Source of the DNA: Lepidodermella squamata | Lineage: Eukaryota; Animalia; Gastrotricha | Direction of reading: 5' to 3' | Assembly: GCA_047495785.1 (NCBI GenBank) | Contig: JBLDXI010000004.1 | Coordinates: 1,674,001-1,738,000, forward strand | DNA length: 64,000 nt | Shown: positions 1-49,920 of the stretch, piece by piece | How positions within the stretch are numbered: the stretch's first letter is position 1 | Layout of the letters: every line of letters starts with the position of its first letter | The notes under the pieces: generated by a model | The model's input: only the letters and a program-made list of their open reading frames with translations | What the model was told of the DNA's origin: nothing | Database searches by the model: none | Program-made: the position numbers and the translations under genes

Positions 1-6025
<6,025 letters not shown>

Positions 6026-26100: not shown

Positions 26101-29100
26101 ACAAAGCTCCCAGATATTGTATAATACCAAGTATATCTTGTGTTTTTTGGATCCCCCTGGAAGTCGCACACTTTGTTGTTGTGTACGATATAAAATGGTG
26201 CGTGACACTTGTTGCTGCGTTGCTTGTTGCTCTAGCAACGAAAAGTTATTCGAGGGTAATATTTAAACCAGAAACTTTTCATATCGGATATTTCGTCAAA
26301 TAGAGACAATTCTCAACTCACAAAGGAATGAATGCATTTTTTACGCCCAACGTTGAAGAAGAGCAACGAGCAACGATTCCTAACACCCATATGCGGGCAT
26401 TGAGGACGGCGACGGGCGATCAGCTCCCAAAATTTCCCAACTTGAATAAAAAATTATTTTTCAAAACTTCTGGGCGGCTAAAATTAGCTATTGAAAGATC
26501 ATCAGTTCTTTTCCAGTGTTGTCTATGGCCCTTTCACGTAATCCCTGCTTCTCAGGTTGAGCACACACAATAAAAACTGAGGCTTCCCTACAGCTTGAGC
26601 CTACTTCTACCACTCTGGCTTGACAATTTAGTACATTATATCTTTTTGCAGACGTACGTACCCTTCCTATGACGAGGCTATTCGTGTCACCAGGAATGCA
26701 GTCGCTGAAGTTTTGCGTTGTCCCGGCCACGCCGTCACGGTAGCCAGTGATGCGATGAGCGCCTGCTGTGAAATCGACGTTCAAAAGCAGGTGCTGCCAG
26801 CGATTAACAGCCGCGTTGCCGGCATCGTTTGCTGTCTGCACTCCACCGCAATTCACTGTGTAGGATATCGACATGTCTGCCGAGGTGTAGAGCAGCTGGA
26901 GAACGGGAGTTGTACCCATGGCCAGCTGCAATATTGGCTGGCTGCCAGCTGTGAGATTTGAAAACAGCATTGCGTGAATGGCTATGGTATAGGATGGCAG
27001 AGGGGCAGAGCGGTTGAAGCCGACCTTGTAACCACTGATATATGAAGCAGCACTAAGTGAATTAGCGGCAGCCGGCGAAAATCGAAACACCTCAGTGTTG
27101 CCCGTCGACCAAGGGAACGCAGCTCCACGAAGGGACGACCCAGTCGCAGTAAGAACATTACTTGCACCATCGACCGTCGACAGGCCGTTGTTGTAGTCGA
27201 AAGGCGTTGATAGGACGGCTTTCATTGTGCTAGTAATTGGGCATCGCCTCGAGGAATAGGCGAATCTTCGCGTGAACACTACTGCGCTATACAGTTGCAC
27301 ACACGCATAGCTCGCCGGCTGGCTGTTTGCACCTCCGATTCTGAAATACGTCGCATCAGTTTGCAGTCCAAAGCCGTCACAGCGTTTTGACCACGAAGTA
27401 ACGAATTCGCCCTCTTGAACGAGATAGGCAGTAGCTGTCCCTATTCTGTACTGAAATCCAACATAGTTCCACTGATTCAGTAGTAGTTTTATCGGGGAAG
27501 TTAGCGTGAAAGGCGTTGTTCCGCCTCTGCAATTAGCGACGAGTTGAAGGTAGCCGGTCGATGATGACCTTAATCCGACGTCAAAAGCTGTTGAATTCAA
27601 CGAATCCGTCCAGCCCATCAACAATCCGCCAAAACTAGCCGGTTTGAAATGAAACAGGAGGGTAACTGACTTGAGAACGACGGTGAAGCGGCTAGCATCA
27701 GAGTTTATCCAAAGATAATCCGTGGGAGAATTGAGCTTCATCGCGCTAAACACATAGAAAAAAGCAATATTGTTTCGGCGCAAGTTTAATTTGATTTACG
27801 TGTTGCTGTAGCTGAGCACATTGTCACACGTCGGGCTTCCAACCGCTGTAAAAACATTGCTTGGTGTGAAGAGATCAGCCAGGTTGCAGGCTAACGGATA
27901 TAGCACAGAAGGCATCGGGGCTGCAAATTGTGACTAACTACTTGTAATAAAGTGCCTCAGAGCAAGAACTCACGAGTCCAAGGAGCTTGAGCACTTTGAT
28001 CAATCTCAGCGTTGTCCAACGCCCGTTTGTAGATCTGGATGTGGGCTAGCCTCCCTGTCCATGCGCCTCCCACCACCAGGTATGCATTCACTTTTACGGC
28101 AGTCGATGTGAAGCAGTTGACCGCGAGAATGCCTCGCAGGATGCGATCGATGAAGGCGCGAGCGATACCCGAGCGGCAGTCGAATGTCACAGCGGTGTGA
28201 ACCCAGCGATTTTTATCGATGATTGCGTAACCATGGATTTTAGGGAAACTCGCAGAGTCGTTGCATGCCCGAGATTGATCCACCTGAAATGTTCCAGTAT
28301 CGTTTATCCAAATTCGCATACACATACTAGGGAAAAAGAGAAATTATTTGTCAATACACAAGCTCGAAGAAGCCTCTGGAGAAGCTTTATACAACTTGAA
28401 ATTTTTTATTCATGAAAATCGTATCAGTGATTCTATACAACCTAAAAAAGCGGTCGACACTGTGAATAAAACCCTTTTGATGCGAAGCACCGAAATTCAC
28501 AAAATTGCGAATGGGAAAAAGTTGCTGTTTTGCTAAAATGACTAGTGATTTCAGGTCACTCCAAAACCTTTCAAAATTGATAAAACAGTGGGATTAATTC
28601 TCATTTTGGTGTTAGGCCTAGCTGAGCCGTGAGGATAATCCCCCTAGGCTCCCGGAAAGTCGCACACTGACTGAACTCTGGTCGTCAGCCGTCCCCTGAA
28701 CCCTCACGGGTACGGCTTGTAACATTTCCAGCGTTGAATTTATTACCAAATTATCCCAATCAAATCCAGGCCGCTACTCTTAAGACCCAGCCTCTAACCG
28801 TAACCTTAACCCTAACCTTAACCAGTTGAATGAATGAATAAAATGGTTAGGTAGTTATTGAACTAGATGAAAGATGGTACCGCATTGAGTTTTCCCCCAC
28901 AAGCTTCCCATACTATGACTTACTTTCCTTGAGTAGAGCTGACCAAATTGAGAATGCCGCTCGTGTGCCACACCCATGCTGAAAATGTCCAGCCGTTCTT
29001 TTTGTCAACAGCCAAATTATCCATGGGCAGAAACATTTTGCCAGAGCCGGACCAAACGAGGGCTGACAAAGGTCGCCCAGTAACACCTGTGCTGAATGTC

Positions 29101-30764
29101 AGCCCGGTTGAGTAGACGCCGTTGTTGCCATTGCCGCTGAGATCGTCAGCTCGACGCAGGATGTCAAGAGGCCAATAGCCATCTGGCACGAGGGTGAATT
29201 TCGGGTCGAGTTGCGGGGTCGTAATTTCCACAGACGTGATAGTTTTCGTCTCGCCCAAATCGATCGTAACGTAAGATCGCTGGAAAGGTTCCCCATTACC
29301 TGTTCGCAGCTTCGTGCAGTTTGTGAAACTTCTCTCTCGGATAACACGGTCGCCAGTCAAAACTGAGGCATCTGGGAGCCCAAGCAATGCATCGGTCGCT
29401 AGGGAATACGCTTTGGCGATGGAAGCATTGAAAGCAATATTCGGTGTATACCTCGGGATAGTTCTACAGCCAAGCAGCTCGATTTTGTAACAAGGCCTCG
29501 CGCCAGAGAATGAAATCGGCTCAATCCTGAAGTATTGCGCAACAATCGGCCTCGGGAATACAACTGTTACGATGGTCAACGCGTCAACGTTACCCGTTAA
29601 AGCAGCTTGGCCATTATTTTCCTGCAACTCAGCCCAGTTATTACTCGACCCAGCCTTGTAGCTCAAGGTGAACACTTTGACCCAAGAATTAAGCATGGCG
29701 CAGCCCTGAATTTGAACAGCAGTTACCACGGTCTGTTTTCTCAGGTCGATTATCAAAGGCATGCTGTTAGCATGCACAGCCAGGCCCCAGTTCAGCCGCG
29801 AGTAATACGGCTTTGCTACTGCAACAGTTTCGGTCGAAAGTTGGGAATCTTCAATTTCATTAGCTTCCATGCCCAGCGGCTCGAAGCACTGAGCTGGAGA
29901 GCCCTTAACTGCTACTTTCGCTTTGCTTGCAACACCCGTTCTATTTTCGAATGTGTTTGTAAATCTGACATGCTTTGTGAGAACCGGTCGGAAAGGCGTG
30001 AATATCGTAGTCTTGCCTTCGATAGCATCCCATAGCCTGTTCTGTCCATGGCCGTTATCAATCGCTTGGAAGGCTAATCCATCAAAACTCCACTCCAATT
30101 TCAGCTTAAATAAACAATTTGCGCAGTAAAGCTGGAATTCCGTCATCCAAACAAAGCGTTGGAGATCGATTTTAAACCAAGAACCAACGGGAGGAATGGT
30201 GGCGAACCCGAAATAATGCGGATGATTTTCGTAGAGATGGCCGAGCGGCGCCTTCTCGTCGCCCATGACAGAGCTCGAAGAGTAACCAAAGTCAGTTACG
30301 TAAGAATTATCAAAGTCAACGATTTCACCGCCTGAAACTTGCTGCAGCAAACTAAGCGATGTCCAAGCTGACTTGAGTATTGCATCCCATGTCGCAGTTA
30401 CAGCACAAGATCTCGTCGAACACTGGCGCGATTTCTTCATGAGACCCTGCGATGCCACTGAGAACGATGTTGCGCCTGCATTTGCTAGGACCTGAGCTAT
30501 CGTCGAGCCAGGCAAGTCGAAGCTCCATAGGTAGCACGTTTGGTTAGTCGCCGTGAATTGGCCAGATCTGCAGAGATCGTTCGAATTACACGAGGCCATG
30601 CAGGTTACGGCGGATGGAACGGAGCTTAAATTTCCGACGAGGTGGATCGAGAGGTTGTAGCCAGGTGTAACTGGGCCGATAGCCATTCCCGAATATATGT
30701 TGTAGTGATAACCTCCAGCAGCAACGTTGTGGCATAGCGCTGCCGTTATTACAAGCAAAATCAT
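23183..30764 (-). CDS. PAN + F5/8C + LamG + F-type-lectin-fold protein, copy 2 (inverted duplicate)
   Basis: Same exon order and intron positions as 13667-19691 with highly similar translation; ATG at 30764; introns 1 and 4 enlarged by insertions. Confidence 0.88.
25086..26126. mobile_element. Asymmetric hairpin-ended element (Crypton-like, unclassified) in an intron
   Basis: 15-bp perfect IR TTGTTATCCGGATCA (25117-25131) / TGATCCGGATAACAA (25964-25978), followed by a long imperfect palindrome 25981-26117 centred on TTCGGCTGCGCCTCA; absent from the paralogous intron. Confidence 0.5.
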
Positions 30765-32136
30765 GTTTATGGATTTGATATTATTTTGGTGATAATCAGT
30801 GAACAAGCCCGACTTAACATTGATTTCTTTCACATTTTCTTATGCGTGAAGTTATTTTTCTGAACTCAGTTGTAGGTATTAATTTGCTTCAGCTTTCTCG
30901 TTGCTTCACAGCAACGAATCTTTGTGGACATCTGAAAATCTGCGGCGCACGGATGAATAATTTAGTGGCCACGAAGCTCGCCCACGCCTTTCCGGTGTGA
31001 GAATTCGGCCTTACGCGTTTGCTCGCAGCCATGGTACATTTTTTATGCAAAAACTCACAGCGCTGATCAAATTCCGTCTTCTCAGCTTGAAGAAAGGCGA
31101 AGTTTGCCAGAGATAACAGTGGAAAGCATTCGGATGATTCAAATTTTAGGATGATCTTCCACATAACGGAATTAGAGCTTAAACGCGCTTTCGTTCATTA
31201 CCTCGAGGAAGCCCATATGTATTATGTTCAGGGGCCTGTGGTTAGCTTCACCTGGCAACATTTTCAGCGACGTGGATTACGTTGATTATTAATTCGAACA
31301 TGTTTCTCAACCCGCTTCCTGTCGTTCGAAACTATTTCTAGCGAATGTATAATTGCGAAAAAAACGTATATTCGATCGATGACCGACGTACGATTCTGTT
31401 TTGACATAGACCCGCCCTTTTCACAACGGGAAAATATCGCACAGGCAGACTAAGCCGCAGGAGTCGTCTGTATTGAAGCTTCTTCAAATAATGAAGTTGA
31501 ACTGTTAAGTATCCCTCGGTATACAAGTATGCAGCTCTGTTCTCATAATAGCGCTGCCATTCACAAGGTCAGTCAGAGCGCGAAGTACGGGGGAATGAAG
31601 GGTATCGCATCCCCCAGTTCGGCAGGCCAGATTGGATAGTGGAAAACCCCCCAAAAAACCACAAGGGGGCCCCCTGGTCACAAAATTTGGGACCGGAAAT
31701 ACCCCCTAGTTCAAAGATCCTATGTACTCGCGAACTGAGCATTTGGAAAGTTTAACATTCGAACGCTGGAGTGAGGGACAGAAGCACAAATTTTAGGGAA
31801 ACCTCGACTTTGAGTATTTTCAACCTCAGAAAATATTTACATGACCTTCGATTCATAGAGCGAAGTAGGACCGCAGAACTGGTAGAGATTACAGAAATCG
31901 ACATAAGAGTCCCCCTTCTGGTCTTAGGATGAGTTCACCGTACATACCGATGGACAGGTAGGGATGATCCCTACCATCCCTAGCGGTACTTCGCTCTCTT
32001 CAATTCAGTGTGCTTCAATTCAATGTTATACGAATTTGTTGAAATCATTGGTAATTCGAATTGGCAGTTGGCAGGTCGAAGAGCTAAAATCATTCAGCAA
32101 ATACAAAACTGATAATGCTTTATTTTGTTTCAGCGA

Positions 32137-32435
32137 TCATTCGCAGGGTATAATGAATTCTGGCGGCAGATTGTCGGCGATATACTTCTCAAAATCAGCC
32201 AAAAGCTGTGGGTCTTAGAAGCGATTGCGCCAGCATCTTTAGCGAAAACCCCGGTCTGCTTCGCTCCAGCTCAGTTGTTAACTTCGTTGTTTCGCGTTTT
32301 CGTCAAGCTTGTAAGCTCGCGAATTCTTTCAACAGTTGCATCGTCCAACTCCTTGCCAAGATAGGTAGCAACCTGCCGAATAGCACCAGCTGGGTCCTTT
32401 TTCACATCTTCATATCGAAGGATCAAAATGTCCCT
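32137..32435 (-). pseudogene. Sulfotransferase 3' fragment (copy 3)
   Basis: Matches only the C-terminal third (DILILRYEDVKKDP...). A 31-bp deletion between CAG microhomologies removes the RKGxxGD motif and shifts the frame. Confidence 0.88.
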
Positions 32436-32724
32436 GTTCACATCAAGAATGACGATTTGTTGATGATAATTTTGCCTTTTTCCAAGTTCCGATTCGGCGA
32501 ATCATTTCCTGAACCTGTGATAGGGTTTTGTTTGTTTTTTTCGTGGCAAAAACAATTAAGAATCTGCATTGGTTATTACTGCCGAAACAAAATGATCGAT
32601 GTTGAATCAACAGGAACCTGCTGAGCAGTTTCCGTTCGTGGTGCCTGGTTGATTTCGATATTACATCGCAATAAAAAATGCAGCCATTTATGGAATTCAC
32701 TCTACGAGTTTTCTGGAAACAAAA

Positions 32725-35666
32725 ATGTTACGATTGGCGATTGCAGCTGCTGTTTTGTCGAGTGGCTTCGCCGCTTTCATGAAGACCGTGCCAACAGCCT
32801 TCTGGCCGCTGCGTGACTATCAAGGGCTGTACGACTACAGCGGCAATGGTATCCATGGCGTGAACCCGAGATCTCCCATCTACGACTCAAAGGTTCCGAT
32901 GCCAGACGGGAAAGCCTCGCCGTTGCAACTCGGACCAGATGCTAACAATTACGTCAAATTCACCGACCAGCAACGGCTGAATTTGGGCGCTAAGAACGCT
33001 TGGACCTGCGCGCTGTTCTTCAAAGCCAACACGCCCGCTGCTATGACCATTTTTGAGTACAGTTCTAACCAACCAGAGACCCGTGGATTAGTTTTAGGGG
33101 TTAATTACAAGGACGGTGTTGCCACACGCGACTACCTCTTCGCCCAGATTGACGCTAGCACTCCCAGTTTCGGCGCGTGGTGCACAGTTATTAACTGGCG
33201 ATTCGTTGCCATCTCATTTAACGGCTCCCATTACAACTTGTTTTGCGATACAAAACTTGCGAGCAGCCAGCCGTACAGTAACATTGGAGCTGATACAGCA
33301 ACTGGCGAACTGTTCCTAGGCAGCAGGCAGGGTTATGACACCACTGCCGCGGCGTATGCATTTTGGTTCTCGATCTGGCCGTACGCGCTCAGCGTCGACG
33401 ATTTGCTGTTGTTGAAGCAGCGTGGTACTGAGGCCGTTTTCTTCGATTTGCCGAAAATTCCTGGAAAATCGACGCTATTCAATCCGGATGTTTTCTACCT
33501 CGACGTCATTGGCTTACGTGAGTTATCTTTGTCCGATTGCATTTCATGCCATCCCTCGCGTGAATTATTCAGGAAAACCGCTTTGGAAAGTGAGCTGCGA
33601 CGCAAACGTGAATTCGGGCGGGGCGATATCGGCTTTCCCTATAGCGGAGGAAGGCAAATTGGCTGTACTCTACAGCTCAAAATTGCCGACGAGTCAGAAG
33701 AGGGACGGCGCCTATTTCGAGATTCAAATCAAGACTAATCCCACGCGAACTACTGGCGATGATGGCTACGCAATCTATATCGTGAAAGCCTCCAGTTTGG
33801 CAATAAAGCCAGGTAAAAATGCCGAATAAAATGAAATATCTTTCTACTCTTAATGCAGGTGATTGCCAGGTTTTCAGCAATTACGGACTCCGAAACGAGA
33901 GTGGCGTACTTCAAGCTGGCTTTCGGATCCGCCACTTCAAGGCTCTGATCCACGTCAACCTATTTAATAGCACAACTGACAGTCGAATGTGGCAGGATTT
34001 CAATAAGTTCGGTCTGCAAGCAATTAGTTCAAATTCGTTGTATGGCATCATCGGCATGAACTGTGTGGGTCCAACTCGACCCGCTAATTTGACCTACACC
34101 ATAAGTCTGATCGATGATAACATTATTGTTTCTCTTATCGAAAATCGTGACAACAAAAACAAGCAAACTTGCGCGTCGATCCGCAACCCTGCACTCTATA
34201 ATTACCTGAAAAGTGGGGAATACACAATTGCGGTTGCGGTTGGGAATTTGGTGTTGGATGCTGCAAGTAGAGCCGAAGTTATCAGCATCACCCATTCGAT
34301 AATCGCAAGTGATACAACTTCCTCGACTTCTACAACATCAGCTTCGACTCTTTCGACTAAAGTAGATACCACTGGTACGACTGCATTATCCACACAGGCA
34401 ACGAGTACTTTTACGAGTCAAACCAAAACAACATCTGATACCAGGATGCCCGAAACCTCGACAGTGACAGTGACGAGTATTCCTACTGGCGAAATGTCTA
34501 CAGTCGATGGTACATCCAGTTCAAGCCGAACTTCTTTTGTTAGTCCAATTGATGAAATTGATATGGAAGCCATCTATCTAGCCTTTGAAGCTAGGTTTGA
34601 GAACCTAACTTTCCCAATCCCGCCTACACCCAAACCAAGCTCAAATCTAACAACTGATGAGCTCATCTGGTGGTGTCCTGATCTATCTCCAATCAATCGT
34701 AGCCCATCACCAGTGCATCTACCTCTAAGACTTACTTTCACGTTGGATCGTCTTGCGAAGATCGATGAGGTTGGCAAGAAATTCTCAGCAACTGGCCAAT
34801 TGTACACGCGATGGATGGTCGTGCGATGCCGCTTCAACGAGTCCTACACGTTTGATCGTCTGAAAATTCTCGATCTCACTTCGATCTGGCACCCTGAGAT
34901 AGAGTTCAAAAACGCTGCGAGTGATTTCGGAATGACATCAGATTCCATTGGCAACTACATGGAGTTGTATTTGAATCGAACCGAAGAGAATGCAACATTG
35001 TGGCCGCTCTACTTCTACTGGAAACAGTTCGGCCTGTTCGAGGCCAGCTGCGATTTCAATCTCGAGCGATTTCCGTTTGATACCCAGAAGTGCGAAATCA
35101 TCTTCAGAGTTCAACAGCCTTTAAATTTAGTCACTATTACCAAGGCGAATCTTTCGAGGATAGCGATGGATAGCGAGTCGATCAGTACCTTAGAAGAATG
35201 GCGAGTCCATCCGATCGGCTACAACATCGAAATGGTCCGAAATGGTGATTTGGCATCCAGCCAAGTCGTGTTTTCGCTCGAACTACGCCGCAAGCCAGAC
35301 TACTTCATGTTCAACCTGCTCGGGCCGTGCTTCGTGTTGACTCTTCTCGCGTTCAGTACGATCCTCCTGCCGCCGAGCAACAGCGACCGTGTTTGCTTCA
35401 ACGTGTACCTGCTGCTTGCTTACACAGCATCGATCGGACCGTTGGCGGCGAAGATTCCGCGATCCAATCAACGCGTGCTTATCTCGGATCTCATCATGTC
35501 ACTGGAGGCCGTTAGCCTGCTGCTAACAACTGAGAGTTTGGTTGTATTCTGGCTTAGCCAACGCAAATCGAAGGCGCATTTGTGTCGAAGAATTGACGTG
35601 GTTTGCTACGGCATCCTGTTGCTAGCTGTGTCTGGTATCGTTGTCTACTGCGCAAAACAAGCCTAG
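32725..35666 (+). CDS. LamG/pentraxin + L-type-lectin-like + Ser/Thr stalk + Cys-loop ligand-gated ion channel fusion, copy 1 (946 aa)
   Basis: Exons 32725-33517, 33573-33812 and 33859-35666 join in frame (2841 nt). Signal peptide; FWPL...WRFVAISFNG LamG; GDDGYAIYIV lectin-like motif; IWHPEIEFKN; Cys-loop CDFNLERFPFDTQKC; LRRKP followed by four TM helices. Confidence 0.88.
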
Positions 35667-36626
35667 TTCACTGTACGTATTATGCGTTTATGGCGTAGTA
35701 ACTGTAAATATTTGTAAATGATAAAAATCGAAGTTGTTCAGTTATTCAATTGCTGTAATAAATAAGTTGTGGACTTTTAGTTCAACTCCGAACCAAATTT
35801 GGGTTGCTTTCAGCTTTAAGAATTTCTTACTTAAACTGAATGTATAGATTGAAACCACAACAATATAAGCAGCTTCGAAGTCAGCTAGAACAAAACTAGT
35901 TAGCTGATTTTAAGCTGGGCGCCACAATGGAGTCGTCAACCCACGTGCGAAAACTAGGTCAGAGGGACTCAGGGGGGCATTAACTTATATCCATTAACTT
36001 ATTAGCTAATTAGCATTTCTTTCAGTGGCACAATGGGTAATAGGTCGTTCGTCATAGTGATTACCAATATATATGTATGAGATTTCGAGGCGAAATGAAG
36101 ACTGATTGGCCTGCGTGCCCATTTTTGTCGCTTACCTATTATGGAGCGGCCTGTTATGTTCTAATAGGAGTTCTACGCAACTAACAAGTTGATCTGAACA
36201 CAGGCTCGCATTTTCTGAAGGAGACGCTGTTCGGATTCCACACGTAACTTTGTGTCCAAAACATTTGAAAGAAATTGATGCCTTGATGCAGTTTCGAAGA
36301 TGAACCTTTACACTTTACAGGATCGACGATGTTGTTTTCAAAGTTGAATAATTTGAATACATTGAAGTTGCGATAGAGGATTCATTTCAGCTATAAATTC
36401 AATCGGTTTGATCCATGACAATAAGGCAATAGTTTTAATAATTGGTTTTAATTTCGAATTCCGGCCTATCAGAGTTTTGCTTGGGGCCTGGGAGGTGTTA
36501 TTGCATTGGCAAACAATACAGCGCCGCCTGCAAAGCAAACAAAACTTCGAAACGGTCGCTCAGAATTGAAGTTTTTCCCGGATCAACATTGTCAATAACA
36601 CGGTCGATTTTTGACTTCAGCTAGAA

Positions 36627-39600
36627 ATGATAAGATTGGCCTTGGCTGCCTCTTTCGCAACAACTTGCCTCGCGGCTATGATGAAGAGCGCGCCGATAGC
36701 TTTCTGGCCGTTGCGCCGTTCGCAAAAAATTGACGACTACAGTGGCAATGACATCGACGGTGTGAACAGCAGCGCCCTTGTATTCAACGATGGAACAGGC
36801 CCAAACGATTGGACAATCCCAATTCAACTCGGGCAGGATGCAGCTGACTACATACACTTCACCGATGCGAAGCTTGACATAAGCCTGAAAAACGCATGGA
36901 CCTATGCGCTCTACTTTAAAATCGACACATCTAATGCAGTGCCCATTTTCGAGTATAGATCAAGCACATCTTCTGACAGCATCGGCTTTCATTTTTGGGC
37001 TAACTACGCCGAAGGCACAAGTGGGGCGGGCCACTTATACGCTAGGGTTCGTCAGGGCGATTCCGGTATACAGGCGCCGTGCGAGTTCGCTAAGGGATGG
37101 CGATTCGTCGCCGTTTCATTCGACGGCTCCAGTCTCAGGTTGTTTTGCGATGACAATTATGTGAATAGCATGAATTACAATGGCCAAGCGGATACAACAA
37201 CACGCGAGATGTTACTTGGTAAAAGGCTAGGCCAGGGCACTGAAACTACAACTTACGCGTTTTGGTTTTCAATATGGCCGTACGCGCTCAGCGCTGACGA
37301 ATTGCTGGTGTTGAAGCGACGCGGGGCTGATCCTACTTTCCGCGACCAACATACCGGGGATTTCTCTTCAAAACTGTACTACGTTGACGTCATAGGCTTA
37401 CGTGAGTTTTAGAAATTATCGCCAATCTTCAAGCTTTAATGTAGCTGGATTAATGCTTTCAAATCATCGACCCATAATTTCTTCATAAGTGCCCAAACAT
37501 TTTTGCAACATCATAAATTGATGCCATTCGCTCATTTATTTAGCGAATCTCTCTTGAACATGATTTTAAAAGCTGTAATCGCTCTAAGTTTATGTAGTTA
37601 AAAGGAAGAGATTTATGAGCTTTAGCATTGGAAAATAGGTGAATAAGCTGAGAGACATCATTTTTGCCGCTGGGAAATGTTCGAATATGCAAGAAACTCT
37701 ACGTGCTTTTCATCAAAATATAGGCAAGGCAGCAATTTTTCGCTATTTACGCTTTCGGGATGATTGAATCGTGGCTTGTAATGGGGAGCCATGGGAAAAA
37801 AATGACAAGAGTAAGCACTAATATTTCAGAATCATCCTTTTTATTCAATGTTAACTTTCTCAAAACGGATACCTCAAAACGAATTTTGCATGCATATATA
37901 GTTCCCGAGCTGCTCTTTCGCGTGATTCATATAAGATTTGAGGTGGGCAACCCAACCGTTGTTACACGATACAAAAACCTCGCTTTCACTGTGGTTTCAT
38001 TTATTTTGATGAGATCAAGACTGAGCAGCAATTGCCCACCTCAAATCTTATACCACGCGAAAGAGCAGCTCGCGATCTATATGCATGCAAATTTGGTGAA
38101 CAACGGAGGTATCCGTTTTGAGAAGTATTCGATTTAATAATGCAGATCAAAATGTTAGCTTGAGTGCTTACTCAGGTATTTCTTTCTATGGGTTTTTCCT
38201 AATGTAAACTACGAGTTTCTCGCATAAGAAAGCGGAAGAGCAAAATCGCCGGGTTTGGGCTGCTGAACTAACGGTTACTTGGTAGGGCGTTGGTCGTTTT
38301 GAAAGCTACGTCACCACATAAACTTAGCGATTAGAGCTTTCAAAATCATGGAGAGATTCGCCAAAATGGCAGCAATTAATAATTTTATAAAATCATTTGA
38401 CACGCTGTATAGAAGAAGTGGTCATTCATATAGCAAAATGAAATTTTCCAGCCTCCGTTAATGGTCTCCACTGAAAGAATCGGGCTAGTAAGGGAGCGTA
38501 AATTAATGGGCTTCTTTTCTGAAATTTGAAATTTAGAATCGACACTTCCTTTACGATCAGGGAGAAAATTAGCGTGGAATAACCGCTTGAAGTCACCTAT
38601 TGTTAACATGGGCTATGTACATTTGATTTTGTTCCTAGGTGGGCAGCGGTGGAAAACGAGCTGTGATGTTTCAACAGCAGATGGAGTGATATCAGCCTTC
38701 CCTAGCCCGGGTGAGAACAAAATTGCTGTACTGTACAACAAAGGCGTCACGACTAAGGCTGATGGAGCGCATTTCGAAATCAGAATCAATACTACGGCGT
38801 CGCAATCTGGTGGAAATGACGGTTATGCAATTTACATCGTGAAAACATCCAGTGTAGCTAATCAGACAGGTAGGATACCCCGCAAGTCTTCGCCCTATGT
38901 TTGATCTCGTTTTTATAGGTGATTGTCAGATCTACAAAAATTACGGCTTGCGAAACGAGAGTGGCGCACTGCAAGCCGGATTTCGAATTCGCCACTACAG
39001 GTCTCTGATCCACGTCAACCTGTTCGACAGTACAACAGACAACGAAATGTGGCAGGATGAAAATAAATTCGGCCTGCACGCCATTAGTAACGCGTCTTTT
39101 TATGGCAAAATCGGCAACGGCTGCGTCGTTACAACTCAGCCTGCTGATTTAACCTACGTGATACGTTTGGCTGATGGTAGCATTGTTGTTGACCTCATCC
39201 AAGATGGTCGAAAGAACACGAGCCAAAATTGTGCGTCAGTTGCCGCTAACCCAACACTGATGGACTACTTGAACAGTGGCAATTACACGATAGCTGTGGC
39301 AGTTGGAAATTCTGCCCGGGAATACGCGAGCGCAGCCGAAGTGATCAGCATTTCTCACATGAAACTAATTGCTAAAACCTCGACGACGACCCTAACATCA
39401 ACAGTCGTTTCTTCGACGAGTTCAACCAAAAGCGCAACCAGTGATTCGTCTACAACTTCCACACCCACCTCTTCAGTCTCCTCGAGTTTTACGGCTTCTC
39501 CCGCTGTTTCAAGCTATCCCGACTCTGTCCCAAGTCTAAACCCCACTATTTTTTCTACTGCTACTACTTCAACCGAAACGCCTAGCGGTGATACGCCTCC

Positions 39601-40855
39601 GATATCCACGGCCACTGCGATGGGTCAAACTGAAACGACTAATGCCAATATGCCTGAAACAGCCACCCGGAGTTATGCGTCGTCCACAAAAACAACTGCG
39701 ACCGATACATCACCGATAACGCTTAGTACCTCTGCTACTCCAGATGATCACACGAAAGAGGAAGCCCTGTTTCAAGCTTACGAAGCTGTGGCTGAGGAAC
39801 AATCTTTCCCAATGCTACCAAAACCAAAGCCAAGCTCAAATCTAACAACCGATGAGCTTATTTGGTGGTGTTCTGATCTATCCCCGATCAATCGAAGCCC
39901 ATCGCCTGTAAATTTGCCCCTGAGACTTACTTTCACATTGGATCGACTCGCGAAGGTCAAAGAGGTTCGAAAAACATTTTCGGTCACAGGCCAGTTGTAC
40001 ACACGATGGATGGTTGTGAGATGTCGTTTCAATGACTCTTTCATCCTCGATCGTGTAAAAATTCAGGACCTGAGCTCGATCTGGCACCCTGAGATCGAAT
40101 TCAGAAACGCCGCGAGTGACACTGGGATGACATCTGACTCGATTGGCAACTACATGGAACTATATATTAATAGAACTGTAGAGAATGCTACGCTGTGGCC
40201 ACTTTACTTCTACTGGAAACAGTTCGGCCTGTTCGAGGCCAGCTGCGATTTTAACCTCGAGAAATTCCCGTTTGACACCCAAAAGTGCGAGATCATCTTC
40301 AGAATTCAACAGCCTTTGAATTTGGTAACTATTACCAAGGCGAACCTATCAATGATGGATAGCGAATCGCTAAGTACCCTAGAAGAATGGCGAGTCTATC
40401 CGATTGGCTACAGCATCGAAATGGTCCGAAACGGTGATTTGGCATCGAGCCAAGTCGTGTTTTCGCTCGAACTGCGCCGCAAACCAGACTATTTCATGTT
40501 CAATCTGCTCGGTCCGTGCTTCGTGTTGACTCTTCTCGCGTTCAGTACGGTTCTGCTGCCGCCGAGCAACAGCGACCGTGTTTGCTTCAACGTGTACCTG
40601 CTCCTTGCTTACACAGCATCGATCGGGCCGTTGGCGGCGAAGATCCCGCGATCCAATCAACGCGTGCTCATCTCGGATCTCATCATGGCGCTGGAGGCTG
40701 TCAGCCTGCTGCTGACGACTGAAAGCCTGCTCGTGTTCTGGCTCAGCCAGCGCAAATCGAAGGCGCATTTGTGTCGAAAGATCGACATCAGTTGCTACGG
40801 CATCCTGTTGCTAGCTGTGGCTGGTTTTGTATTCTACTGCCTTAAAAGGGCTTAG
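36627..40855 (+). CDS. LamG/pentraxin + L-type-lectin-like + Ser/Thr stalk + Cys-loop channel fusion, copy 2 (980 aa)
   Basis: Exons 36627-37401, 38639-38869 and 38919-40855 join in frame (2943 nt); same intron positions as copy 1; Cys-loop CDFNLEKFPFDTQKC. Confidence 0.88.
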
Positions 40856-43239: not shown

Positions 43240-45558
43240 ATTTTTACTAGATAAATCACTGCCTCATGGCCTAAAGTTGCGAAAGTACGAATTTCTGAAA
43301 ATGTCCGCGGAAAAAACAATGATTTGCCGGTAAAGAAACGTATCACGCGATGTCTGGTCGATAAAGTCTTAAGCTGTCAATTAGCATAAGCTTCAGGTGA
43401 AAACAAAATTTTTTTCACTGCCCGGGGGCTCATCTTATCGGTAAGTATTTGCCACTCTCAAAATCTAGTTTTTGACATTAGCTAATAAAGGGACACAAAT
43501 TTCCCTTTCTAGATGAAAAAAGTCGAAAATGCCTAAACCTACAAGGCTAATCGATAGACCTATTTTTGTTCGCAAAATCTTAATTTTTGAACTTAATATT
43601 TGAACTCGGTAAGAACTGCAAGATATTGAATTCGGAATTCCTTGCATAGCCCTTTCAGGTATCTCAAGTGCAATTAAGTGCTTATCTAACTAATAAATTT
43701 TTTAAATATATTCAGGTGAAAACGAAAAAATACCGAAAAAACCAAACCAATCAGCTCCTTTTTCGATCCAAAACCGCAAGATTTATTACAACTTGAAAGT
43801 TAATCGGATCTCTACCTTGGAACTCAAGACAATTCTAGGCATGCTTCATATTAATGGCTCAAAACTGGCCTGGATTATCGGAATGAAACCGTGTCAGAGT
43901 TAACAGGTTACCGAAATACGGCAAGAGCCACTTGATAGCCCTATTGAGCTAATGAGTGGCGGCTATCGATGATACTTGTGATATTATCGCGTAATGACTA
44001 CTCGCGTAAGTATATGCCTGCCATCGTACGTGAGTGAGTGCGTGCGAATCGATGCGCAAAATCATCAGCCACTTTGCCTAAGGACAACAACCGCTTGAGT
44101 TGAGCATCGTCGTCGTCGTTAGTTTTCAGCCGTTAGCGGTTTTTTTTCTGCCTCAGCCCTGTTTGCTTTTCACTCACTTTCTTGTTCTTCTCAAGTGTAT
44201 TCTTCGGTGATATTTTTTACGGCGCAGTGAGGTGATTGCCGTATCAATGAGAGTAGAATCGATATTTACCTAGAAATTGTACAATAAGTCGTTGTCAAAC
44301 ATTTGTTGGTAAACATTTGCAAAAATTCGAAAGTTTTACTTATATTCACATCATCGCTGTAGTAATATAACAAACTGAAATTAATCAATTGCCACGCAAA
44401 TTTCGCCTGAGTAGGTGAAAACCCTGCCGCACGCATAGCTTGACCAATACTGAACGGATTCGCCGCTTGTTCCAGCCTTTGAACCTCGCGACACAAAACT
44501 CCTTCATCCGCCGTTGAATCGTATGATGGGGATTTATCGCTAGCAGGAATTCTCTATCTGAAAAATTCTTGTAATTCTTGTGGTGACTTGAAATTATAGT
44601 ATAAAACTAACCAGCTTTCGATAGCATGGAAGCACTGGTGATTTGATGCAAAATCGTGGAAAATAACAGCAGACAAGGTAGAAAATCCATGTAATAGGCC
44701 TTGCTAGCGCACTACACTGCCACTTGAAGGCTCTTCTGCGCTGGAATCCTATTTCAGTGTCCTGAAGCACGTGCACGAACCTGGAATTTGTGGCAGATTC
44801 AGCCAGCGAGCGTTCAATTGGCTCGATCAGCTTTACATACGTTCACACTCATGTTATTTCACGCAGTTCCGCGTCTAATATAACTCCTGTCTATGTGCGC
44901 ACATAGCTGCGAGCAGCGGTTTGAATTTCTCAAATTCCTGCGTCAGATGCCTCGAGTCGTTACACAGTCATTTCAGACAGCTTAGCTACTAGAAGAATGG
45001 CTGAGTCAAGCCGCCGCTATGATTACTAGATACTCGATAGTCTTCGAAGTGAGAAATTAAGTAGATGAAATTTCAAAATTGAAACTTCAAATTCTTAAAC
45101 AAATTGAAAACTATTTAAATTTGAGCTGGCTAGTTTTCATGTCAATCTTTTATGATCTGAAGACAAACACGGTCAAGGTCACTTCACGAGTTGTACTTCA
45201 GCCAGCGATAGGCGATATCGATTCCAAGTATCGATTTCATGAATCAGTGATTTTTTAGATAGGTACCCTGTATCAACCGTGATGTTGACTCACTGTATGA
45301 GTCCTAACAAATTGAAAATTCAAATTTCTCAAAATTCGTGAGGTTTGAAAAAACCATTGCTTTCCTCGAAAAAATGTCAATTTCCAAGAGGCTTTTGTTT
45401 GGTCACACCAGTCTCACACTGTATGATATACTACAGATATAGGCTTATCAGCATTCACGCTGATTAGCTGGAACGTGGCAGATAACGAATGCATAAACTG
45501 GCACTCGCAGAAAGGCGTACACTTTACAGCCATCAGAAATAGCTGCACCATAGAAAAA

Positions 45559-48500
45559 ATGTACCCAGTGCCTTACTATTCACCGTACAATTTGCCGTAT
45601 ACCAACTACACGTTCTACCAAGAACAGCCGTCAAACGCCCCACCCTGCTGCTCGGAGGCCGTCATCGAAGCCGTCACACATCGAAAACCGCCCGTTGACT
45701 TCAATCCTTACACACAGTCAACATTACCACCACCCGGTCCTATCTACCCGCCTGTGCCTAGCAACGATTCATACGTGAAACAGGCAAGACCTGCCAACTA
45801 CCCTCAACCTGGGTTCTTCCCACCTGGAATCACCCCGGCTGTTACGCATGGGTCAGCCTGCAATATACCAGGCTGCGTCGACTGCCGTAGTAGTTCTTGC
45901 CTCCCTTACTCATATTACCAACAGGACCCTAATCGGCCTTCAGTTGGCTGGGAGCCGATAACTTGGGAACCTTATAACAACCAACTGCCCTACCCGAACC
46001 AACAGCCAGGTGAAGTAATTGTCCAGCGGCAGTCAAATGCAAACGCCTTACAAGCTGGAAGCGCCTCGCCGCGGTTGAGCGAAGTCCTATCCGGCTCAGC
46101 GAACGTCCTGCCCGAAAATCTGGCGAGCCCACAGAAAATCATTAGCAAGACTTACGTTGAGGTGCGAGCGGAATGCGCGAAATCAAAACGGCTCTACGAT
46201 GACGTTGAATTCCCGGCGAATAACTTGAGCATAAGTGCGTTCCGCCGACCGACAAGGCCGATTGAGTGGAAACGGCCGAAGGAGCTAGTCGCGAACCCGA
46301 AGTTCATCTTCGATGGGATGAGCCGTTTCGACATTGTCCAGGGTGAACTCGGCGATTGTTGGCTACTGGCGGCGATGGCGAATTTAACCCTCTACCCTGA
46401 GCTGATTGAACGCGTCGTGCCGCCTGATCAGAGCTTTGACGGGCCGAACTACAACGGCGCCTTCCGATTCAATTTCTGGGTCTACGGCCATTGGGAGGAA
46501 GTTGTCATCGACGACAGACTGCCGACGTACAACGGGCGGTTGGTCTACATGCATTCGCAGCATAAAAACGAGTTTTGGTCCGCGCTGCTCGAGAAGGCGT
46601 ATGCGAAACTCGTTGGCTCGTACGATAACCTGCGCGGTGGTTCGACCTGCGAATCTATGACCGACCTCTCGGGCGGGTTCTGTGAGATTTTCGAGCTCAA
46701 GGAAAAAACTCCACCTGCTCTGGTGCAAATTTTGCAGAAGGCAAATGAACGTGGCTCCCTTATGTGTTGTTCGATCAATCAACGTGAGAACATGCCGTCG
46801 ATGGCGCAACTTCCAAACGGCTTGATCATGGGACATGCGTACAGTGTGACGGATATCAAGAAGGTCACGTCGAGGTCTGGCGACATCAATTTGATCCGCA
46901 TCAGGAATCCATGGGGTCAAACCGAGTGGAATGGAGCTTTCTCAGACAAGTCAGTCTTTTCAGAAATTTGCAAACTTTGTGACTGCAATTTTTTTTTTAA
47001 ATTGGGGAAAATGTACAAAAAATGAAAATTTTTGAGATAATATTTATTGGAAAAATTCTGGAAAATGTTTTTAAAATTCAGAAGAATTTCGGAGAATTTA
47101 GGAAAATTCTGGAAGATATCTGAAAATATAAAAAAATATGGAAAATTTCAAAATATTTTTTTTTCATAGGAAATTTTGGAAAATAATCAAAGTTAATCAG
47201 GAAAGGTTCTAAAAATTAAAACATTAAAAAATCAGAAAATATTCGTGTTCATGATAGCATTAATGAATAGTGGTTCGGAAAGGGAAACCGGAAATTATAT
47301 CTTCAATTTTCGTTATTTCAGCTCTCCAGAGTGGCAAAAAATTTCTGAAGACCAGAAGAAGAAGATCGGCGTTAGTTTTGGCACAGATGGCGAATTCTGG
47401 ATGGCCTACAACGATTTCACATCGAATTTCGAACTTCTCGAAATGTGCAATCTTTCATTCGACCTGCTCGGAACTCGGGAACAACTGGAGAAGCTCACGA
47501 TATCCGCTACCCAGTCAATCCGTTGCATGACCAAAGTTCGAAAATGGGAGACGACCATCATTGAAGGCGAGTGGCGGCGGTACTTCAACGCCGGGGGTTG
47601 TCGAAATTTCATTCAGAGTTTCGCTAGCAACCCGCAATACCGCATCAGACTGACGGAGTACGACGAGCATGACCCGGAGAAGCTGTGCACGGTCCTCATC
47701 GGGCTGATGCAGAAAGACAGGCGGAAGGTGAAGTCTGAAATACCAACCTTCTTAACCATCGGCTTTTCGCTGTACAAACTGACAGAGGCCGATTGCGCGA
47801 GGCCGTTAGATCAAGGGTTTTTCGAGAGGAATGTCTCAAAGGCTAGGTCGAGCTTTATCAATTTGAGAGAAGTGTCCGGAAGGTTCCGGCTCCCACCTGG
47901 GATCTACGCGATTATTCCATCTACATTCGAACCTAATACCGATTGCGAATTTGTTTTACGAGTCTACTCAGAACGGAAGTGTACGGCTGAGTAAGTTATG
48001 AAAATATTGGTTAATTATAGTTGACTAAAATGTTCTCTAGCGAACTAGACACGGCTACGATGAAAGTAGCTCCTAAGCCTTTGCCAGTTCCATCAGCCAA
48101 GGAATCAAAAGAGACCAATAACTTGGGATCTTTGACGGATGAACAGATACGCAAGAAAGCCATCGATGCTTTCCGTCAAGTCGCTGGTTCCGATGGCGTG
48201 GTCGATGCTTACGAATTGCAGCAGGCCATGGCTAAGAAGTTCTCGGAAATGTTCAAATTCGATGGTTTTAGCCTCGACACCGTGCGGTCGATGGTGGCGT
48301 TGAAGGACAAAGGCCTGACTGGCACGTTGAATTTGTACGAGTTCATGGACTTGTACAAGGACCTCGCCTACTGGAGCCGCGTGTTCGTGCAGTTCGACGT
48401 GAAGAAAAGCGGCAAAATGGAGGCGGTCAAGCTGCGCGACGCTCTCAGCCACATCGGCTTAGGGCTCAGTAACAAGGTGTTTAAAACTATGGTGCTTCGA

Positions 48501-48786
48501 TACTCGGACAAAACAGGTCGAATCAGCTTTGACGATTTTGTCAACTGCGGAATTCGACTTTCATGCATGCTAGGTAAAACAGAGCTTATTTTACTTATAA
48601 TATAATTCCAGATTCAACTTATTTTGTTTAATAGAAAAATTCAAGGCTGCGAGTGATCCGAAAGATAAAATTCCTAAAGCAGGATTTCTTCTGGACGACG
48701 TAAGCTATTATATTAGATGAATGTTTAAATTTATTTTTCAAACTTTTGTTCGATTGCAGTTTGTGATAACAACAATGTACTGTTGA
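45559..48786 (+). CDS. Classical calpain (CysPc + C2-like + penta-EF-hand) with a Pro/Tyr/Gln-rich N-terminal extension
   Basis: Catalytic QGELGDCW, GHAYSV, RNPWG; domain III AGGCRNF...NPQY...PSTFEP; EF-hands. Exons about 45559-46949, 47322-47990, 48041-48573, 48636-48699, 48760-48786. Confidence 0.95.
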
Positions 48787-49123: not shown

Positions 49124-49195
49124 AGGCTCAGGGGGGGATCGAACCCTCGATCTTCTGCTTACTAGGCAGACGCTCTACCACTAAGCTACTGAGCC
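49124..49195 (-). tRNA. tRNA-Thr(AGT)
   Basis: Acceptor GGCTCAG/CTGAGCC; anticodon arm TCTGC-CTAGTAA-GCAGA; TTCGATC loop; one T-stem mismatch; T-run downstream. Confidence 0.9.
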
Positions 49196-49848: not shown

Positions 49849-49920
49849 GGGCCTGTCCGGGATTTGAACCCGAGACCTCTCGCACCCAAAGCGAGAATCA
49901 TACCCCTAGACCAACAGGCC
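49849..49920 (-). tRNA. tRNA-Pro(TGG)
   Basis: GGCCTGTTGGTCTAGGGGTATGATTCTCGCTTTGGGTGCGAGAGGTCTCGGGTTCAAATCCCGGACAGGCCC followed by a T-run. Confidence 0.96.

What the first reader, a model, noticed from the sequence alone, without database searches (positions are those of the whole stretch)
32725..40855. Tandem pair of lectin-fold + mucin stalk + Cys-loop channel fusions: candidate glycan-sensing pentameric receptors
Seen: two three-exon genes splice in frame to 946 and 980 aa. Each has a signal peptide, a pentraxin/LamG-like domain, a second beta-rich domain with GDDGYAIYIV / GNDGYAIYIV and YTIAVAVGN...AEVISI, a Ser/Thr stalk, and a complete pLGIC (loop A WxP, C-x13-C Cys-loop, four TM). 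The second domain, stalk and channel share one exon, so the fusion is not a splicing artefact. Known: animal Cys-loop receptors normally start right after the signal peptide; extra N-terminal jelly-roll domains are described in prokaryotic channels such as DeCLIC, and pentraxins are themselves pentamers. Inference: the second domain is L-type (legume/ERGIC-53) lectin-like, and the protein is a pentamer holding ten lectin-fold domains on a glycosylated stalk, coupling glycan or surface contact to a channel (contact chemosensation, immunity or adhesion).
Basis: partly seen in the sequence, partly recalled or inferred. Interest (0 to 1): 0.92.

Follow-up and report, generated by a model that had tools for sequence, protein, structure and literature searches.

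The report
Ion-channel genes carrying extracellular antenna domains
Two neighbouring genes of an unidentified invertebrate each encode a nicotinic-receptor-type ion channel subunit carrying a long extra outer arm (a lectin-fold domain, two further beta-rich domains and a sugar-coated stalk), a layout that textbooks assign to bacteria but that the lobster genome paper already reported for crustaceans.

Summary
Two tandem three-exon genes (32725-35666 and 36627-40855, + strand) splice GT..AG in frame to 946 and 980 aa. Each has a signal-peptide-like start, a Laminin_G_3 domain, a further beta-rich region, a Ser/Thr-rich stalk and a complete Cys-loop channel with four TM helices and a ~15-residue M3-M4 loop.

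An RNA run covers gene 1 and contains the exon 1/exon 2 junction. All domains are under purifying selection (dN/dS 0.07-0.34; stalk 0.71) at dS of about 1.

- No test supports an L-type lectin. The "YTIAVAVGN" motif matches the C-terminal hairpin of PKD/Ig-like domains. The rest of domain 2 is an orphan: no relatives among 1.84 billion representatives.
- The acetylcholine aromatic box is absent.
- The 85-125-residue stalk argues against rigid allosteric coupling. I favour a tethered binding or anchoring antenna.

The architecture class is not new. The lobster genome paper (PMC8221624) described 66 Cys-loop channels with C-type lectin, pentaxin and LDLa domains, and ESM Atlas holds arthropod clusters of that kind. 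This is a new variant with different head domains and no detectable orthologues.

The scan has noted similar fusions on other pieces of this genome (s1-365918, s1-384346, s1-384292, s1-384293, s1-379545).

The parts
32725..33517 (+). Gene 1 exon 1: signal-peptide-like start (aa 1-19) and Laminin_G_3 domain (aa 73-226, about nt 32941-33402)
   Evidence: ORF and splice model. Pfam PF13385 E 3.5e-8, 34.2 bits against cut-off 27.6. Hydropathy.
33518..33572 (+). Gene 1 intron 1 (55 nt, GT..AG, phase 1)
   Evidence: RNA contig of run X1 skips 33517->33573, GT..AG, depth 6.27, 43 letters on the shorter side.
33573..33812 (+). Gene 1 exon 2 (240 nt, symmetric phase 1-1): first 80 aa of the orphan beta-rich domain 2a, with GDDGYAIYIV
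   Evidence: No Pfam family. X1 RNA contigs lie on 33649-33814.
33813..33858 (+). Gene 1 intron 2 (46 nt, GT..AG, phase 1). The junction was not seen in RNA.
   Evidence: The frame breaks if the intron is retained, and the position and phase are the same in gene 2. No joint is listed.
33859..34043 (+). Gene 1 exon 3, start: last ~60 aa of orphan domain 2a
   Evidence: AF2 partial model gives three long strands and then a low-confidence stretch. No relatives.
34044..34298 (+). PKD-like / Ig-like beta-sandwich (domain 2b, aa ~407-491) with NPALYNYLKSGEYTIAVAVGN
34302..34556 (+). Ser/Thr-rich mucin-like stalk of gene 1 (aa ~493-577)
   Evidence: Composition. No tandem DNA repeat. dN/dS 0.71 and barely alignable between the paralogues.
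34647..35297 (+). Channel extracellular domain of gene 1 (aa ~608-824). The Cys-loop CDFNLERFPFDTQKC lies at nt 35049-35093.
   Evidence: Pfam PF02931 E 6.2e-14. PDB phmmer best match is muscle nAChR gamma/epsilon at 9.3e-20. C-x13-C.
35301..35666 (+). Transmembrane domain M1-M4 of gene 1 with a ~15-residue M3-M4 loop, then the stop codon
   Evidence: Four hydrophobic segments. M1-M3 align to nAChR gamma. M2 and M3-M4 sequences.
36627..37401 (+). Gene 2 exon 1: signal-peptide-like start and Laminin_G_3 domain
   Evidence: Pfam PF13385 E 4.2e-10, 40.4 bits. 45% identical to gene 1.
37402..38638 (+). Gene 2 intron 1 (1237 nt, GT..AG). It holds a high-copy foldback element at about 37797-38185.
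   Evidence: Nested inverted repeats. Depth 4000-11000 against about 45 in DNA run X2.
38639..38869 (+). Gene 2 exon 2 (231 nt, phase 1-1): start of domain 2a with GNDGYAIYIV
38870..38918 (+). Gene 2 intron 2 (49 nt, GT..AG)
38919..40855 (+). Gene 2 exon 3: rest of domain 2a, PKD-like domain, longer Ser/Thr stalk (aa ~485-610) and a complete Cys-loop channel (Cys-loop at nt 40244-40288)
   Evidence: PF02931 E 1.8e-13; channel about 92% identical to gene 1.

Best explanation
These are two old tandem paralogues that are selectively maintained. At least gene 1 is transcribed. Each encodes a subunit of a pentameric Cys-loop channel of the nicotinic (cation-channel) branch.

The N-terminus of each subunit carries a multi-domain extracellular extension: signal peptide, Laminin_G_3 (ConA-like) domain, an orphan beta-rich domain of about 145 aa, a PKD-like Ig sandwich, and a Ser/Thr-rich, presumably O-glycosylated stalk of 85-125 aa.

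The channel part keeps the gating hardware: Cys-loop FPFDxQxC, loop A WxPE, pre-M1 Arg, M2 Leu 9', and Asp -1'/Arg 0'. It lacks the acetylcholine aromatic box (loop B Trp is Gln; loop C is short, with no Tyr and no Cys-Cys). It has almost no intracellular loop.

Shown: the gene structure, the domain content, the selection pattern, transcription of gene 1 and its first splice junction.

Inferred:
- The subunits form pentamers, so five heads stand some 20-30 nm above the membrane on mucin-like stalks.
- The heads bind a macromolecular extracellular partner (matrix, cuticle, mucus or a foreign surface).
- Because the tether is long and flexible, the head acts as an anchoring or capturing antenna. 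It takes over the localisation role that the missing intracellular loop plays in other receptors, and it may pass tension or proximity to the extracellular domain. It does not act as a rigid allosteric lectin sensor.
- The heads evolve four to five times faster than the channel, as expected of a recognition module.
For: - Gene models, phases and motifs.
- Pfam Laminin_G_3 and Neur_chan_LBD above curated cut-offs.
- Signal-like start, four TM segments and C-x13-C.
- The channel aligns from the extracellular domain through M3 to muscle nAChR gamma/epsilon (E 9e-20). Loop B and loop C resemble non-alpha subunits.
- M2 and M3-M4 sequences are identical in both copies.
- dN/dS is 0.34 (LamG), 0.25 (domain 2), 0.71 (stalk), 0.07 (extracellular domain) and 0.12 (TMD), at dS 0.4-1.35.
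- Amino-acid identity runs 45% / 64% / about 92% from head to channel.
- RNA coverage is confined to gene 1 and includes the exon 1/2 junction.
- PKD-like signal in domain 2b.
- No furin-type site lies between head and channel.
- Precedent for lectin/pentaxin-LGIC chimeras expressed in lobster brain and antennules: PMC8221624. Arthropod clusters of that architecture.
- From general knowledge: adhesion GPCRs such as ADGRG4 have a pentraxin/LamG-like head on a long mucin-like stalk ahead of the membrane transducer.
Against: - There is no functional data of any kind. Pentamer formation, surface expression, O-glycosylation, ion selectivity and ligand are all inferred.
- The exon 2/3 junction and all of gene 2 lack RNA support. 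The RNA evidence rests on one short contig in a run full of assembly artefacts.
- The head structure could not be modelled. AF2 gave pLDDT 43.6 for the LamG exon and 61 for a truncated domain 2.
- The LamG head could bind a small ligand or a glycan and still gate the channel in trans by contacting the extracellular domain.
- The subunits could be accessory partners of ordinary alpha-type subunits encoded elsewhere.
Confidence: 0.55

Rival explanations
1. Pattern-recognition ionotropic receptor, which is the first reader's idea and the reading offered for the lobster chimeras. The LamG head and the other head domains bind a glycan or a microbial or food-derived surface pattern. That binding opens the cation channel directly, giving contact chemosensation or a fast neuro-immune signal.
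For: - The ConA-like Laminin_G_3 head is present.
- The heads diverge fast while the channel is conserved.
- The neurotransmitter pocket is degenerate, so another trigger is needed.
- Lobster lectin/pentaxin-LGICs are expressed in antennules and brain (PMC8221624).
- Neighbouring genes encode PAN, discoidin and LamG_3 proteins.
Against: - A flexible, non-conserved stalk of 85-125 residues (dN/dS 0.71) separates head and channel. Conformational coupling would therefore need the head to fold back onto the extracellular domain.
- Laminin_G_3 is a fold family, not evidence of sugar binding.
- The L-type lectin assignment is not supported.
- No binding data exist.
Confidence: 0.22
2. Accessory (non-alpha-like) subunits. 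The two proteins co-assemble with ordinary alpha-type nicotinic subunits encoded elsewhere. The receptor is still gated by acetylcholine or another small transmitter. The head only positions or clusters the receptor extracellularly.
For: - The best PDB matches are the non-alpha muscle subunits gamma, epsilon, beta and delta.
- The loop D Trp of the complementary face is kept while the principal-face residues are lost.
- The minimal M3-M4 loop leaves no room for intracellular scaffolding.
Against: - No partner subunit lies in the window.
- The channel is only about 23% identical to any database pLGIC, so assembly with canonical subunits is speculative.
- Per scan notes, the genome holds several other head-bearing families. 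That suggests self-contained receptor families.
Confidence: 0.15
3. Gene-model artefact or decaying genes. The head exons and the channel exon belong to different genes, or the loci are pseudogenes.
For: - The exon 2/3 junction and all of gene 2 are without RNA support.
- An in-frame ATG lies inside intron 2, in ORF 33819-35666.
Against: - Domain 2 continues across the exon 2/3 boundary and shares exon 3 with the channel.
- A channel started at 33819 would lack a signal peptide.
- Intron positions and phases are identical in two copies separated by dS of about 1. dN/dS is well below 1 in every domain and the ORFs are intact.
- The exon 1/2 junction is seen in RNA.
Confidence: 0.04

Closest known systems
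Lobster 'immune-LGIC' chimeras (Homarus americanus genome, Polinski et al. 2021, PMC8221624) and the arthropod Pentaxin+LDLa+Neur_chan_LBD clusters in ESM Atlas
   Same: An animal Cys-loop channel subunit preceded by extracellular recognition-type domains of the ConA-like or lectin kind. It is an expanded, lineage-specific family with unknown ligands.
   Different: The head here is Laminin_G_3 + orphan domain + PKD-like domain + mucin-like stalk. No C-type lectin, Pentaxin (PF00354) or LDLa domain is detected and PF02932 is not detected either. The organism's calpain does not nest inside arthropods. Whether the channel moieties share an origin was not testable here. The lobster paper states that such chimeras were not found outside crustaceans.
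DeCLIC and other prokaryotic pLGICs with N-terminal domains (PMC9897478; bioRxiv 10.1101/2025.02.27.640520; Tasneem et al. 2005, PMC549065)
   Same: A pentameric channel with extra beta-rich domains N-terminal to the extracellular domain.
   Different: DeCLIC's two lobes sit directly on the extracellular domain and modulate gating. Here a Ser/Thr-rich linker of 85-125 residues intervenes. There is no sequence similarity: the head profiles get no PDB hits. This protein is a eukaryotic Cys-loop receptor, not a Pro-loop one.
Non-alpha muscle-type nicotinic receptor subunits (gamma, epsilon, beta, delta)
   Same: These are the best sequence matches of the channel part (E 9e-20 to 1e-12), aligned from the extracellular domain through M3. 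Shared features are the Cys-loop signature, loop A WxP, loop D Trp, Leu 9', and the absence of the loop-C Cys-Cys pair.
   Different: Identity is about 23%. The M3-M4 loop is about 15 residues instead of more than 100. The pore lining is unusual (Tyr 6', Gly 16', Pro 17'). There is an extra conserved Cys pair in the extracellular domain (g1 C617 and C668), and a 600-aa N-terminal extension.
Adhesion GPCRs with a pentraxin/LamG head on a mucin-like stalk (e.g. ADGRG4/GPR112). This is an analogy from general knowledge and was not tested here.
   Same: The logic is the same: a ConA-like head, a long Ser/Thr-rich spacer, then a membrane signal transducer. It has been proposed to sense adhesion or force.
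   Different: The transducer is unrelated (a 7TM with a GAIN domain, against a pentameric channel). There is no autoproteolysis module here.

Membership tests
Cys-loop / pentameric ligand-gated ion channel superfamily | Extracellular ligand-binding-domain fold (Pfam PF02931) above the curated threshold | tested here: met
   52.4 and 50.9 bits against cut-off 26. PDB nAChR matches down to E 9e-20.
Cys-loop / pentameric ligand-gated ion channel superfamily | Cys-loop of two cysteines 13 residues apart with the FPFD signature | tested here: met
   CDFNLERFPFDTQKC (g1 742-756) and CDFNLEKFPFDTQKC (g2 778-792).
Cys-loop / pentameric ligand-gated ion channel superfamily | Four transmembrane helices, with M2 lining the pore (Leu 9') | tested here: met
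   Four hydrophobic segments. M1-M3 align to nAChR gamma. M2 reads ...DRVCFNVYLLLAYTAS... with Leu at 9'. Pfam PF02932 itself gave no hit at E<=1.
Cys-loop / pentameric ligand-gated ion channel superfamily | Assembly into pentamers that conduct ions | not testable with these tools
   Needs expression and recording or a structure.
Acetylcholine-gated nicotinic receptors | Aromatic box: loop B Trp, loop C Tyr-x-Cys-Cys and a second Tyr | tested here: not met
   In the alignment to nAChR gamma, the loop B position is Gln (FRVQQ). Loop C is short (VRNGDLASSQ), with no aromatic residue and no Cys-Cys. Only the loop D Trp and loop A WHPE are kept (residue roles from general knowledge of Torpedo alpha1).
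Concanavalin A-like lectin/glucanase superfamily (Laminin_G_3, PF13385) | Profile match above the curated threshold across the domain | tested here: met
   34.2 and 40.4 bits against 27.6, covering profile positions 3-149 of 151. ESM Atlas neighbours are all Laminin_G_3, score 0.97.
Concanavalin A-like lectin/glucanase superfamily (Laminin_G_3, PF13385) | Jelly-roll fold in a confident model | tested here: inconclusive
   AF2 with two sequences gave pLDDT 43.6, which is unusable. No PDB sequence hit.
Pentraxins (PF00354) | Pentaxin profile match or signature | tested here: not met
   No PF00354 hit at E<=1 for either exon 1.
L-type (legume / ERGIC-53 / VIP36) lectins | Profile match to PF00139 or PF03388 | tested here: not met
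   No such hit at E<=10 for the exon-2 or exon-3 parts of domain 2. No PDB hit.
L-type (legume / ERGIC-53 / VIP36) lectins | Structural match of the domain to an L-type lectin jelly roll | tested here: inconclusive
PKD / Ig-like E-set domains (for domain 2b) | Profile match to PKD domains | tested here: inconclusive
   Pfam PKD E 0.17, covering profile positions 9-78 of 80. The only hits of the exhaustive search are PKD and fn3 repeat proteins. hhalign prob 75% over 38 columns. A local PKD HMM scores 15.7 and 14.5 bits against at most 5.8 in shuffles, but the match covers only the 24-28-residue hairpin motif.
Crustacean lectin/pentaxin/LDLa-LGIC chimeras (PMC8221624) | CLECT, Pentaxin or LDLa domain N-terminal to PF02931/PF02932 | tested here: not met
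   None of these three domains is detected. The general concept (recognition domains ahead of a Cys-loop channel) is shared.
Crustacean lectin/pentaxin/LDLa-LGIC chimeras (PMC8221624) | Channel moiety in the same clade as the lobster chimeras | not testable with these tools
   No lobster sequences could be fetched. The word-indexed searches found only relatives at 23% identity.

The most novel reading that the evidence does not exclude
A non-arthropod animal lineage has evolved, independently of crustaceans, whole families of 'adhesion-type' Cys-loop channels. A mucin-tethered LamG/PKD head replaces the neurotransmitter pocket as the trigger. Binding of a macromolecular or surface ligand, or mechanical pull on the tether, then gates a cation channel. 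That would be a new gating modality for pentameric channels: an ionotropic pattern-recognition or tether-gated receptor.
Probability: 0.15. Interest if true: 0.85.

Novelty: new variant of a known kind. Interest (0 to 1): 0.55.

Why it matters
Structural work on pentameric channels still treats N-terminal accessory domains as a prokaryotic feature (bioRxiv 10.1101/2025.02.27.640520). The only report in animals is a genome-level note on lobster.

A second lineage carries the same idea built from different domains: LamG_3, an orphan domain, a PKD-like domain and a mucin stalk. It also lacks both a transmitter pocket and an intracellular loop. That would suggest fusing recognition modules to Cys-loop channels is a recurrent evolutionary solution.

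It would also offer a compact pair of about 950-aa proteins for testing how, or whether, an extracellular antenna controls a pentameric channel.

The two paralogues differ mostly in the head (45% identity) and hardly in the channel (about 92%). They form a natural domain-swap experiment.

Tried and rejected
1. Two word-indexed homologue searches with exon 3 found only pLGICs at 23% identity. They did not find the window's own protein.

2. An exhaustive profile search with the exon-3 part of domain 2 gave three weak hits. All are PKD or fn3 repeat proteins. No orthologue or homologous head exists among the 1.84 billion representatives.

4. AF2 on the LamG exon failed at pLDDT 43.6, so I did not search with that model.

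5. The complete domain 2 and the whole head could not be folded or scanned. The spliced protein has no reference and long letters may not be typed, so this step was left out.

6. hhalign of domain 2 against domain 1, and of its two halves against each other, showed no relation. The LamG_3 head is also not a recent copy of the LamG_3 domains in the neighbouring genes.

7. The attempt to place the organism failed. The calpain has at best 59% identity to anything and sits on a long branch outside every sampled phylum. Rfam and tRNA scans gave only three tRNAs.

8. I rejected the pentraxin reading (no PF00354 hit), a furin-type cleavage between head and channel (no site), and a tandem-repeat origin of the stalk.

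Full report
**Observation**

- Gene 1: 32725-33517, 33573-33812, 33859-35666, giving 946 aa.
- Gene 2: 36627-37401, 38639-38869, 38919-40855, giving 980 aa.
- Each has one terminal stop. All four introns are GT..AG.
- Both introns are phase 1 and sit at homologous positions in the two genes. Exon 2 is a symmetric 1-1 exon of 240 or 231 nt.
- tblastn of the two proteins against the window finds only these two copies.

**Domains that can be named**

- Pfam puts exon 1 of both genes in Laminin_G_3 (PF13385). The scores are 34.2 and 40.4 bits against a cut-off of 27.6, nearly full length.
- Pfam puts exon 3 in Neur_chan_LBD at 52.4 and 50.9 bits against 26.
- The language-model neighbours of exon 1 are all Laminin_G_3 clusters.
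- Hydropathy shows a signal-peptide-like N-terminus and four C-terminal TM segments. M3 and M4 are separated by only about 15 residues.
- The Cys-loop is canonical: C-x13-C with FPFDTQKC.
- Against PDB sequences the channel part matches muscle nicotinic gamma/epsilon/beta/delta subunits best. E runs from 9e-20 down, aligned from the extracellular domain through M3. It therefore belongs to the nicotinic, cation-channel branch.
- Counting back from Leu 9', M2 has Arg 0' and Asp -1' and no Pro-Ala-Arg motif. From general knowledge that predicts cation selectivity. Tyr 6', Gly 16' and Pro 17' are unusual.

**The transmitter site**

In the alignment to nAChR gamma, the loop B position of the alpha-subunit Trp is Gln. 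Loop C is short and has no aromatic residue and no Cys-Cys pair. Loop A (WHPE) and the loop D Trp are kept. The proteins therefore look like non-alpha subunits. A pentamer made only of them would have no classical acetylcholine pocket.

**Are the genes real and used?**

The Nei-Gojobori comparison of the two copies gives:

| Region | dS | dN/dS |
|---|---|---|
| LamG | about 0.8-1.35 | 0.34 |
| Domain 2 | about 0.8-1.35 | 0.25 |
| Stalk | about 0.8-1.35 | 0.71 |
| Extracellular domain | about 0.8-1.35 | 0.07 |
| TMD | 0.43 | 0.12 |

- This is an old duplication with purifying selection on every folded domain, heads included.
- Amino-acid identity falls from about 92% in the channel to 64% in domain 2 and 45% in the LamG head. 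The stalks barely align.
- One public run flagged as RNA (X1) holds short contigs that are at least 99% identical. They cover gene 1 from 33420 to about 35725.
- X1 has zero depth over the intergenic stretch 35820-37619 and over gene-2 exon 1.
- One X1 contig skips 33517->33573 with GT..AG.
- The 33812/33859 junction and the gene-2 junctions were not observed.
- The run is small and full of 'opposite strand' assembly artefacts, so this is thin but positive evidence.

**The second domain**

- No Pfam family reaches significance for the exon-2 or exon-3 parts.
- There is no PDB sequence hit, with a single sequence or with a profile.
- There is no meaningful ESM Atlas neighbour.
- An exhaustive HMMER profile search of 1.84 billion representatives returns only three weak hits, E 3e-5 to 6e-4. 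Two of those hits are PKD-repeat proteins and one is an fn3/Ig repeat protein.
- Profile comparison aligns ...RNPALYNYLKSGEYTIAVAVGN... with the C-terminal 'Y..pG.Y.V.L.V.N' hairpin of a PKD domain: 38 columns, 42% identity, probability 75%.
- A PKD HMM built locally from nine repeats scores 15.7 and 14.5 bits on the two paralogues. The best of 1000 composition-matched shuffles scores 5.8.
- Pfam's own PKD model covers positions 9-78 of 80 on gene 2, at a non-significant E of 0.17.
- AF2 on the exon-3 part (pLDDT 61, pTM 0.63) gives a beta sandwich.

My reading is that 'domain 2' is two modules:
- an orphan beta-rich module of about 145 aa (g1 ~255-405, holding GDDGYAIYIV);
- a PKD-like Ig module (g1 ~407-491).

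The L-type lectin idea is not excluded for the first module. The whole spliced domain could not be submitted to any tool, and nothing measured supports the idea.

**Mechanism**

- The stalk is about 85 aa in g1 and about 125 aa in g2. It is 47% Ser+Thr over the wider segment and 55-70% in its core windows.
- It has no DNA tandem repeats, and it evolves almost neutrally.
- A tether that long, variable and presumably O-glycosylated cannot carry a defined conformational change. That sets these proteins apart from DeCLIC, whose N-terminal lobes sit on the extracellular domain.
- No furin-type site separates head and channel.
- I therefore favour a tethered antenna. Five heads per pentamer bind a macromolecular partner and anchor or concentrate the channel. 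This may compensate for the missing intracellular loop. Tension or proximity is a possible gating input.
- Direct pattern-recognition gating, and an accessory-subunit role in transmitter-gated heteromers, remain live rivals.
- Everything beyond the architecture is inference.

**Comparison with what is known**

- A recent pLGIC structural preprint still states that N-terminal domains belong to prokaryotic members.
- Jaiteh et al. discarded termini in their census.
- Jiao et al. report only dynamin or GAIN additions in mollusc nAChR models.
- The American lobster genome paper (PMC8221624) describes 66 Cys-loop receptors with C-type lectin, pentaxin and LDLa domains. Some are highly expressed in brain and antennules. 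[quoted passage not shown]
- ESM Atlas holds arthropod clusters with Pentaxin+LDLa+Neur_chan_LBD and LDLa+Lectin_C+LBD.
- No later paper in the library follows this up.
- The present genes share the concept but none of those three head domains.
- They have no detectable orthologues.
- They come from an organism whose calpain sits on a long branch outside arthropods and every other sampled phylum.
- Hence the rating: a new variant of a known kind.
- An earlier follow-up in this scan (s1-365918) said the layout was known only from bacteria. The lobster paper contradicts that statement.
- Scan notes list several more head-bearing pLGIC families elsewhere in this genome. I could not inspect them.

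**Surroundings**

The two genes lie in a cluster rich in secreted recognition-type proteins:
- two inverted large genes with PAN, F5/8 type C and Laminin_G_3 domains (13667-19691 + and 23183-30833 -);
- three Sulfotransfer_1 genes or exons (11913-12866 +, 21652-22545 -, 32271-32441 -);
- downstream, an MFS transporter and a calpain.

The pLGIC LamG heads are not recent copies of the neighbours' LamG_3 domains.

**Verdict**

- The architecture has a precedent in crustaceans.
- Interest is moderate to good. It depends on experiments that test whether the antenna controls the channel.

Noticed in passing
window 37797-38185 (inside intron 1 of gene 2): Nested inverted repeats form a foldback element of about 390 nt, resembling a MITE. 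In DNA run X2 its depth is 4000-11000 against about 45 for flanking sequence, so the genome holds on the order of a hundred or more copies. A little RNA-run depth also maps here.
   Followed up: partly
window 13667-19691 (+) and 23183-30833 (-): Two large genes in inverted orientation encode PAN, F5/8 type C (discoidin) and Laminin_G_3 domains. This is the locus another note calls a split F-type lectin. Pfam names the domains F5_F8_type_C, not F-type lectin. Short N-terminal similarity to the pLGIC heads appears at 15245-15346 and 28974-29186.
   Followed up: partly
window 11913-12866 (+), 21652-22545 (-), 32271-32441 (-): Three Sulfotransfer_1 genes or exons (E 1e-51, 1e-54, 3e-12) are interleaved with the lectin-like and channel genes. 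The third lies only about 280 nt upstream of the gene-1 start codon, on the opposite strand.
   Followed up: partly
window 35301-35666 versus 40496-40855: Synonymous divergence between the paralogues drops to 0.43 in the transmembrane domain, against 0.8-1.35 elsewhere. Possible causes are partial gene conversion of the 3' end or strong codon or RNA constraint there.
   Followed up: no
window 49124-50389: A small tRNA cluster: Thr(AGT) and Pro(TGG) on the minus strand and Pro(CGG) on the plus strand.
   Followed up: no
window 45475-48605 (+): A multi-exon classical calpain (Peptidase_C2, Calpain_III, EF-hands). Its catalytic domain is at most about 60% identical to any database calpain. It sits on a very long branch outside all sampled phyla, which suggests a fast-evolving or poorly sampled lineage.
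   Followed up: partly
g1 residues 617 and 668 (nt about 34674 and 34827); g2 residues 653 and 704: An extra pair of cysteines is conserved in both paralogues. One lies in the N-terminal helix of the channel's extracellular domain (WWC) and one in the loop D strand (VVRCRF). They may form an additional disulfide not present in canonical nicotinic subunits.
   Followed up: no
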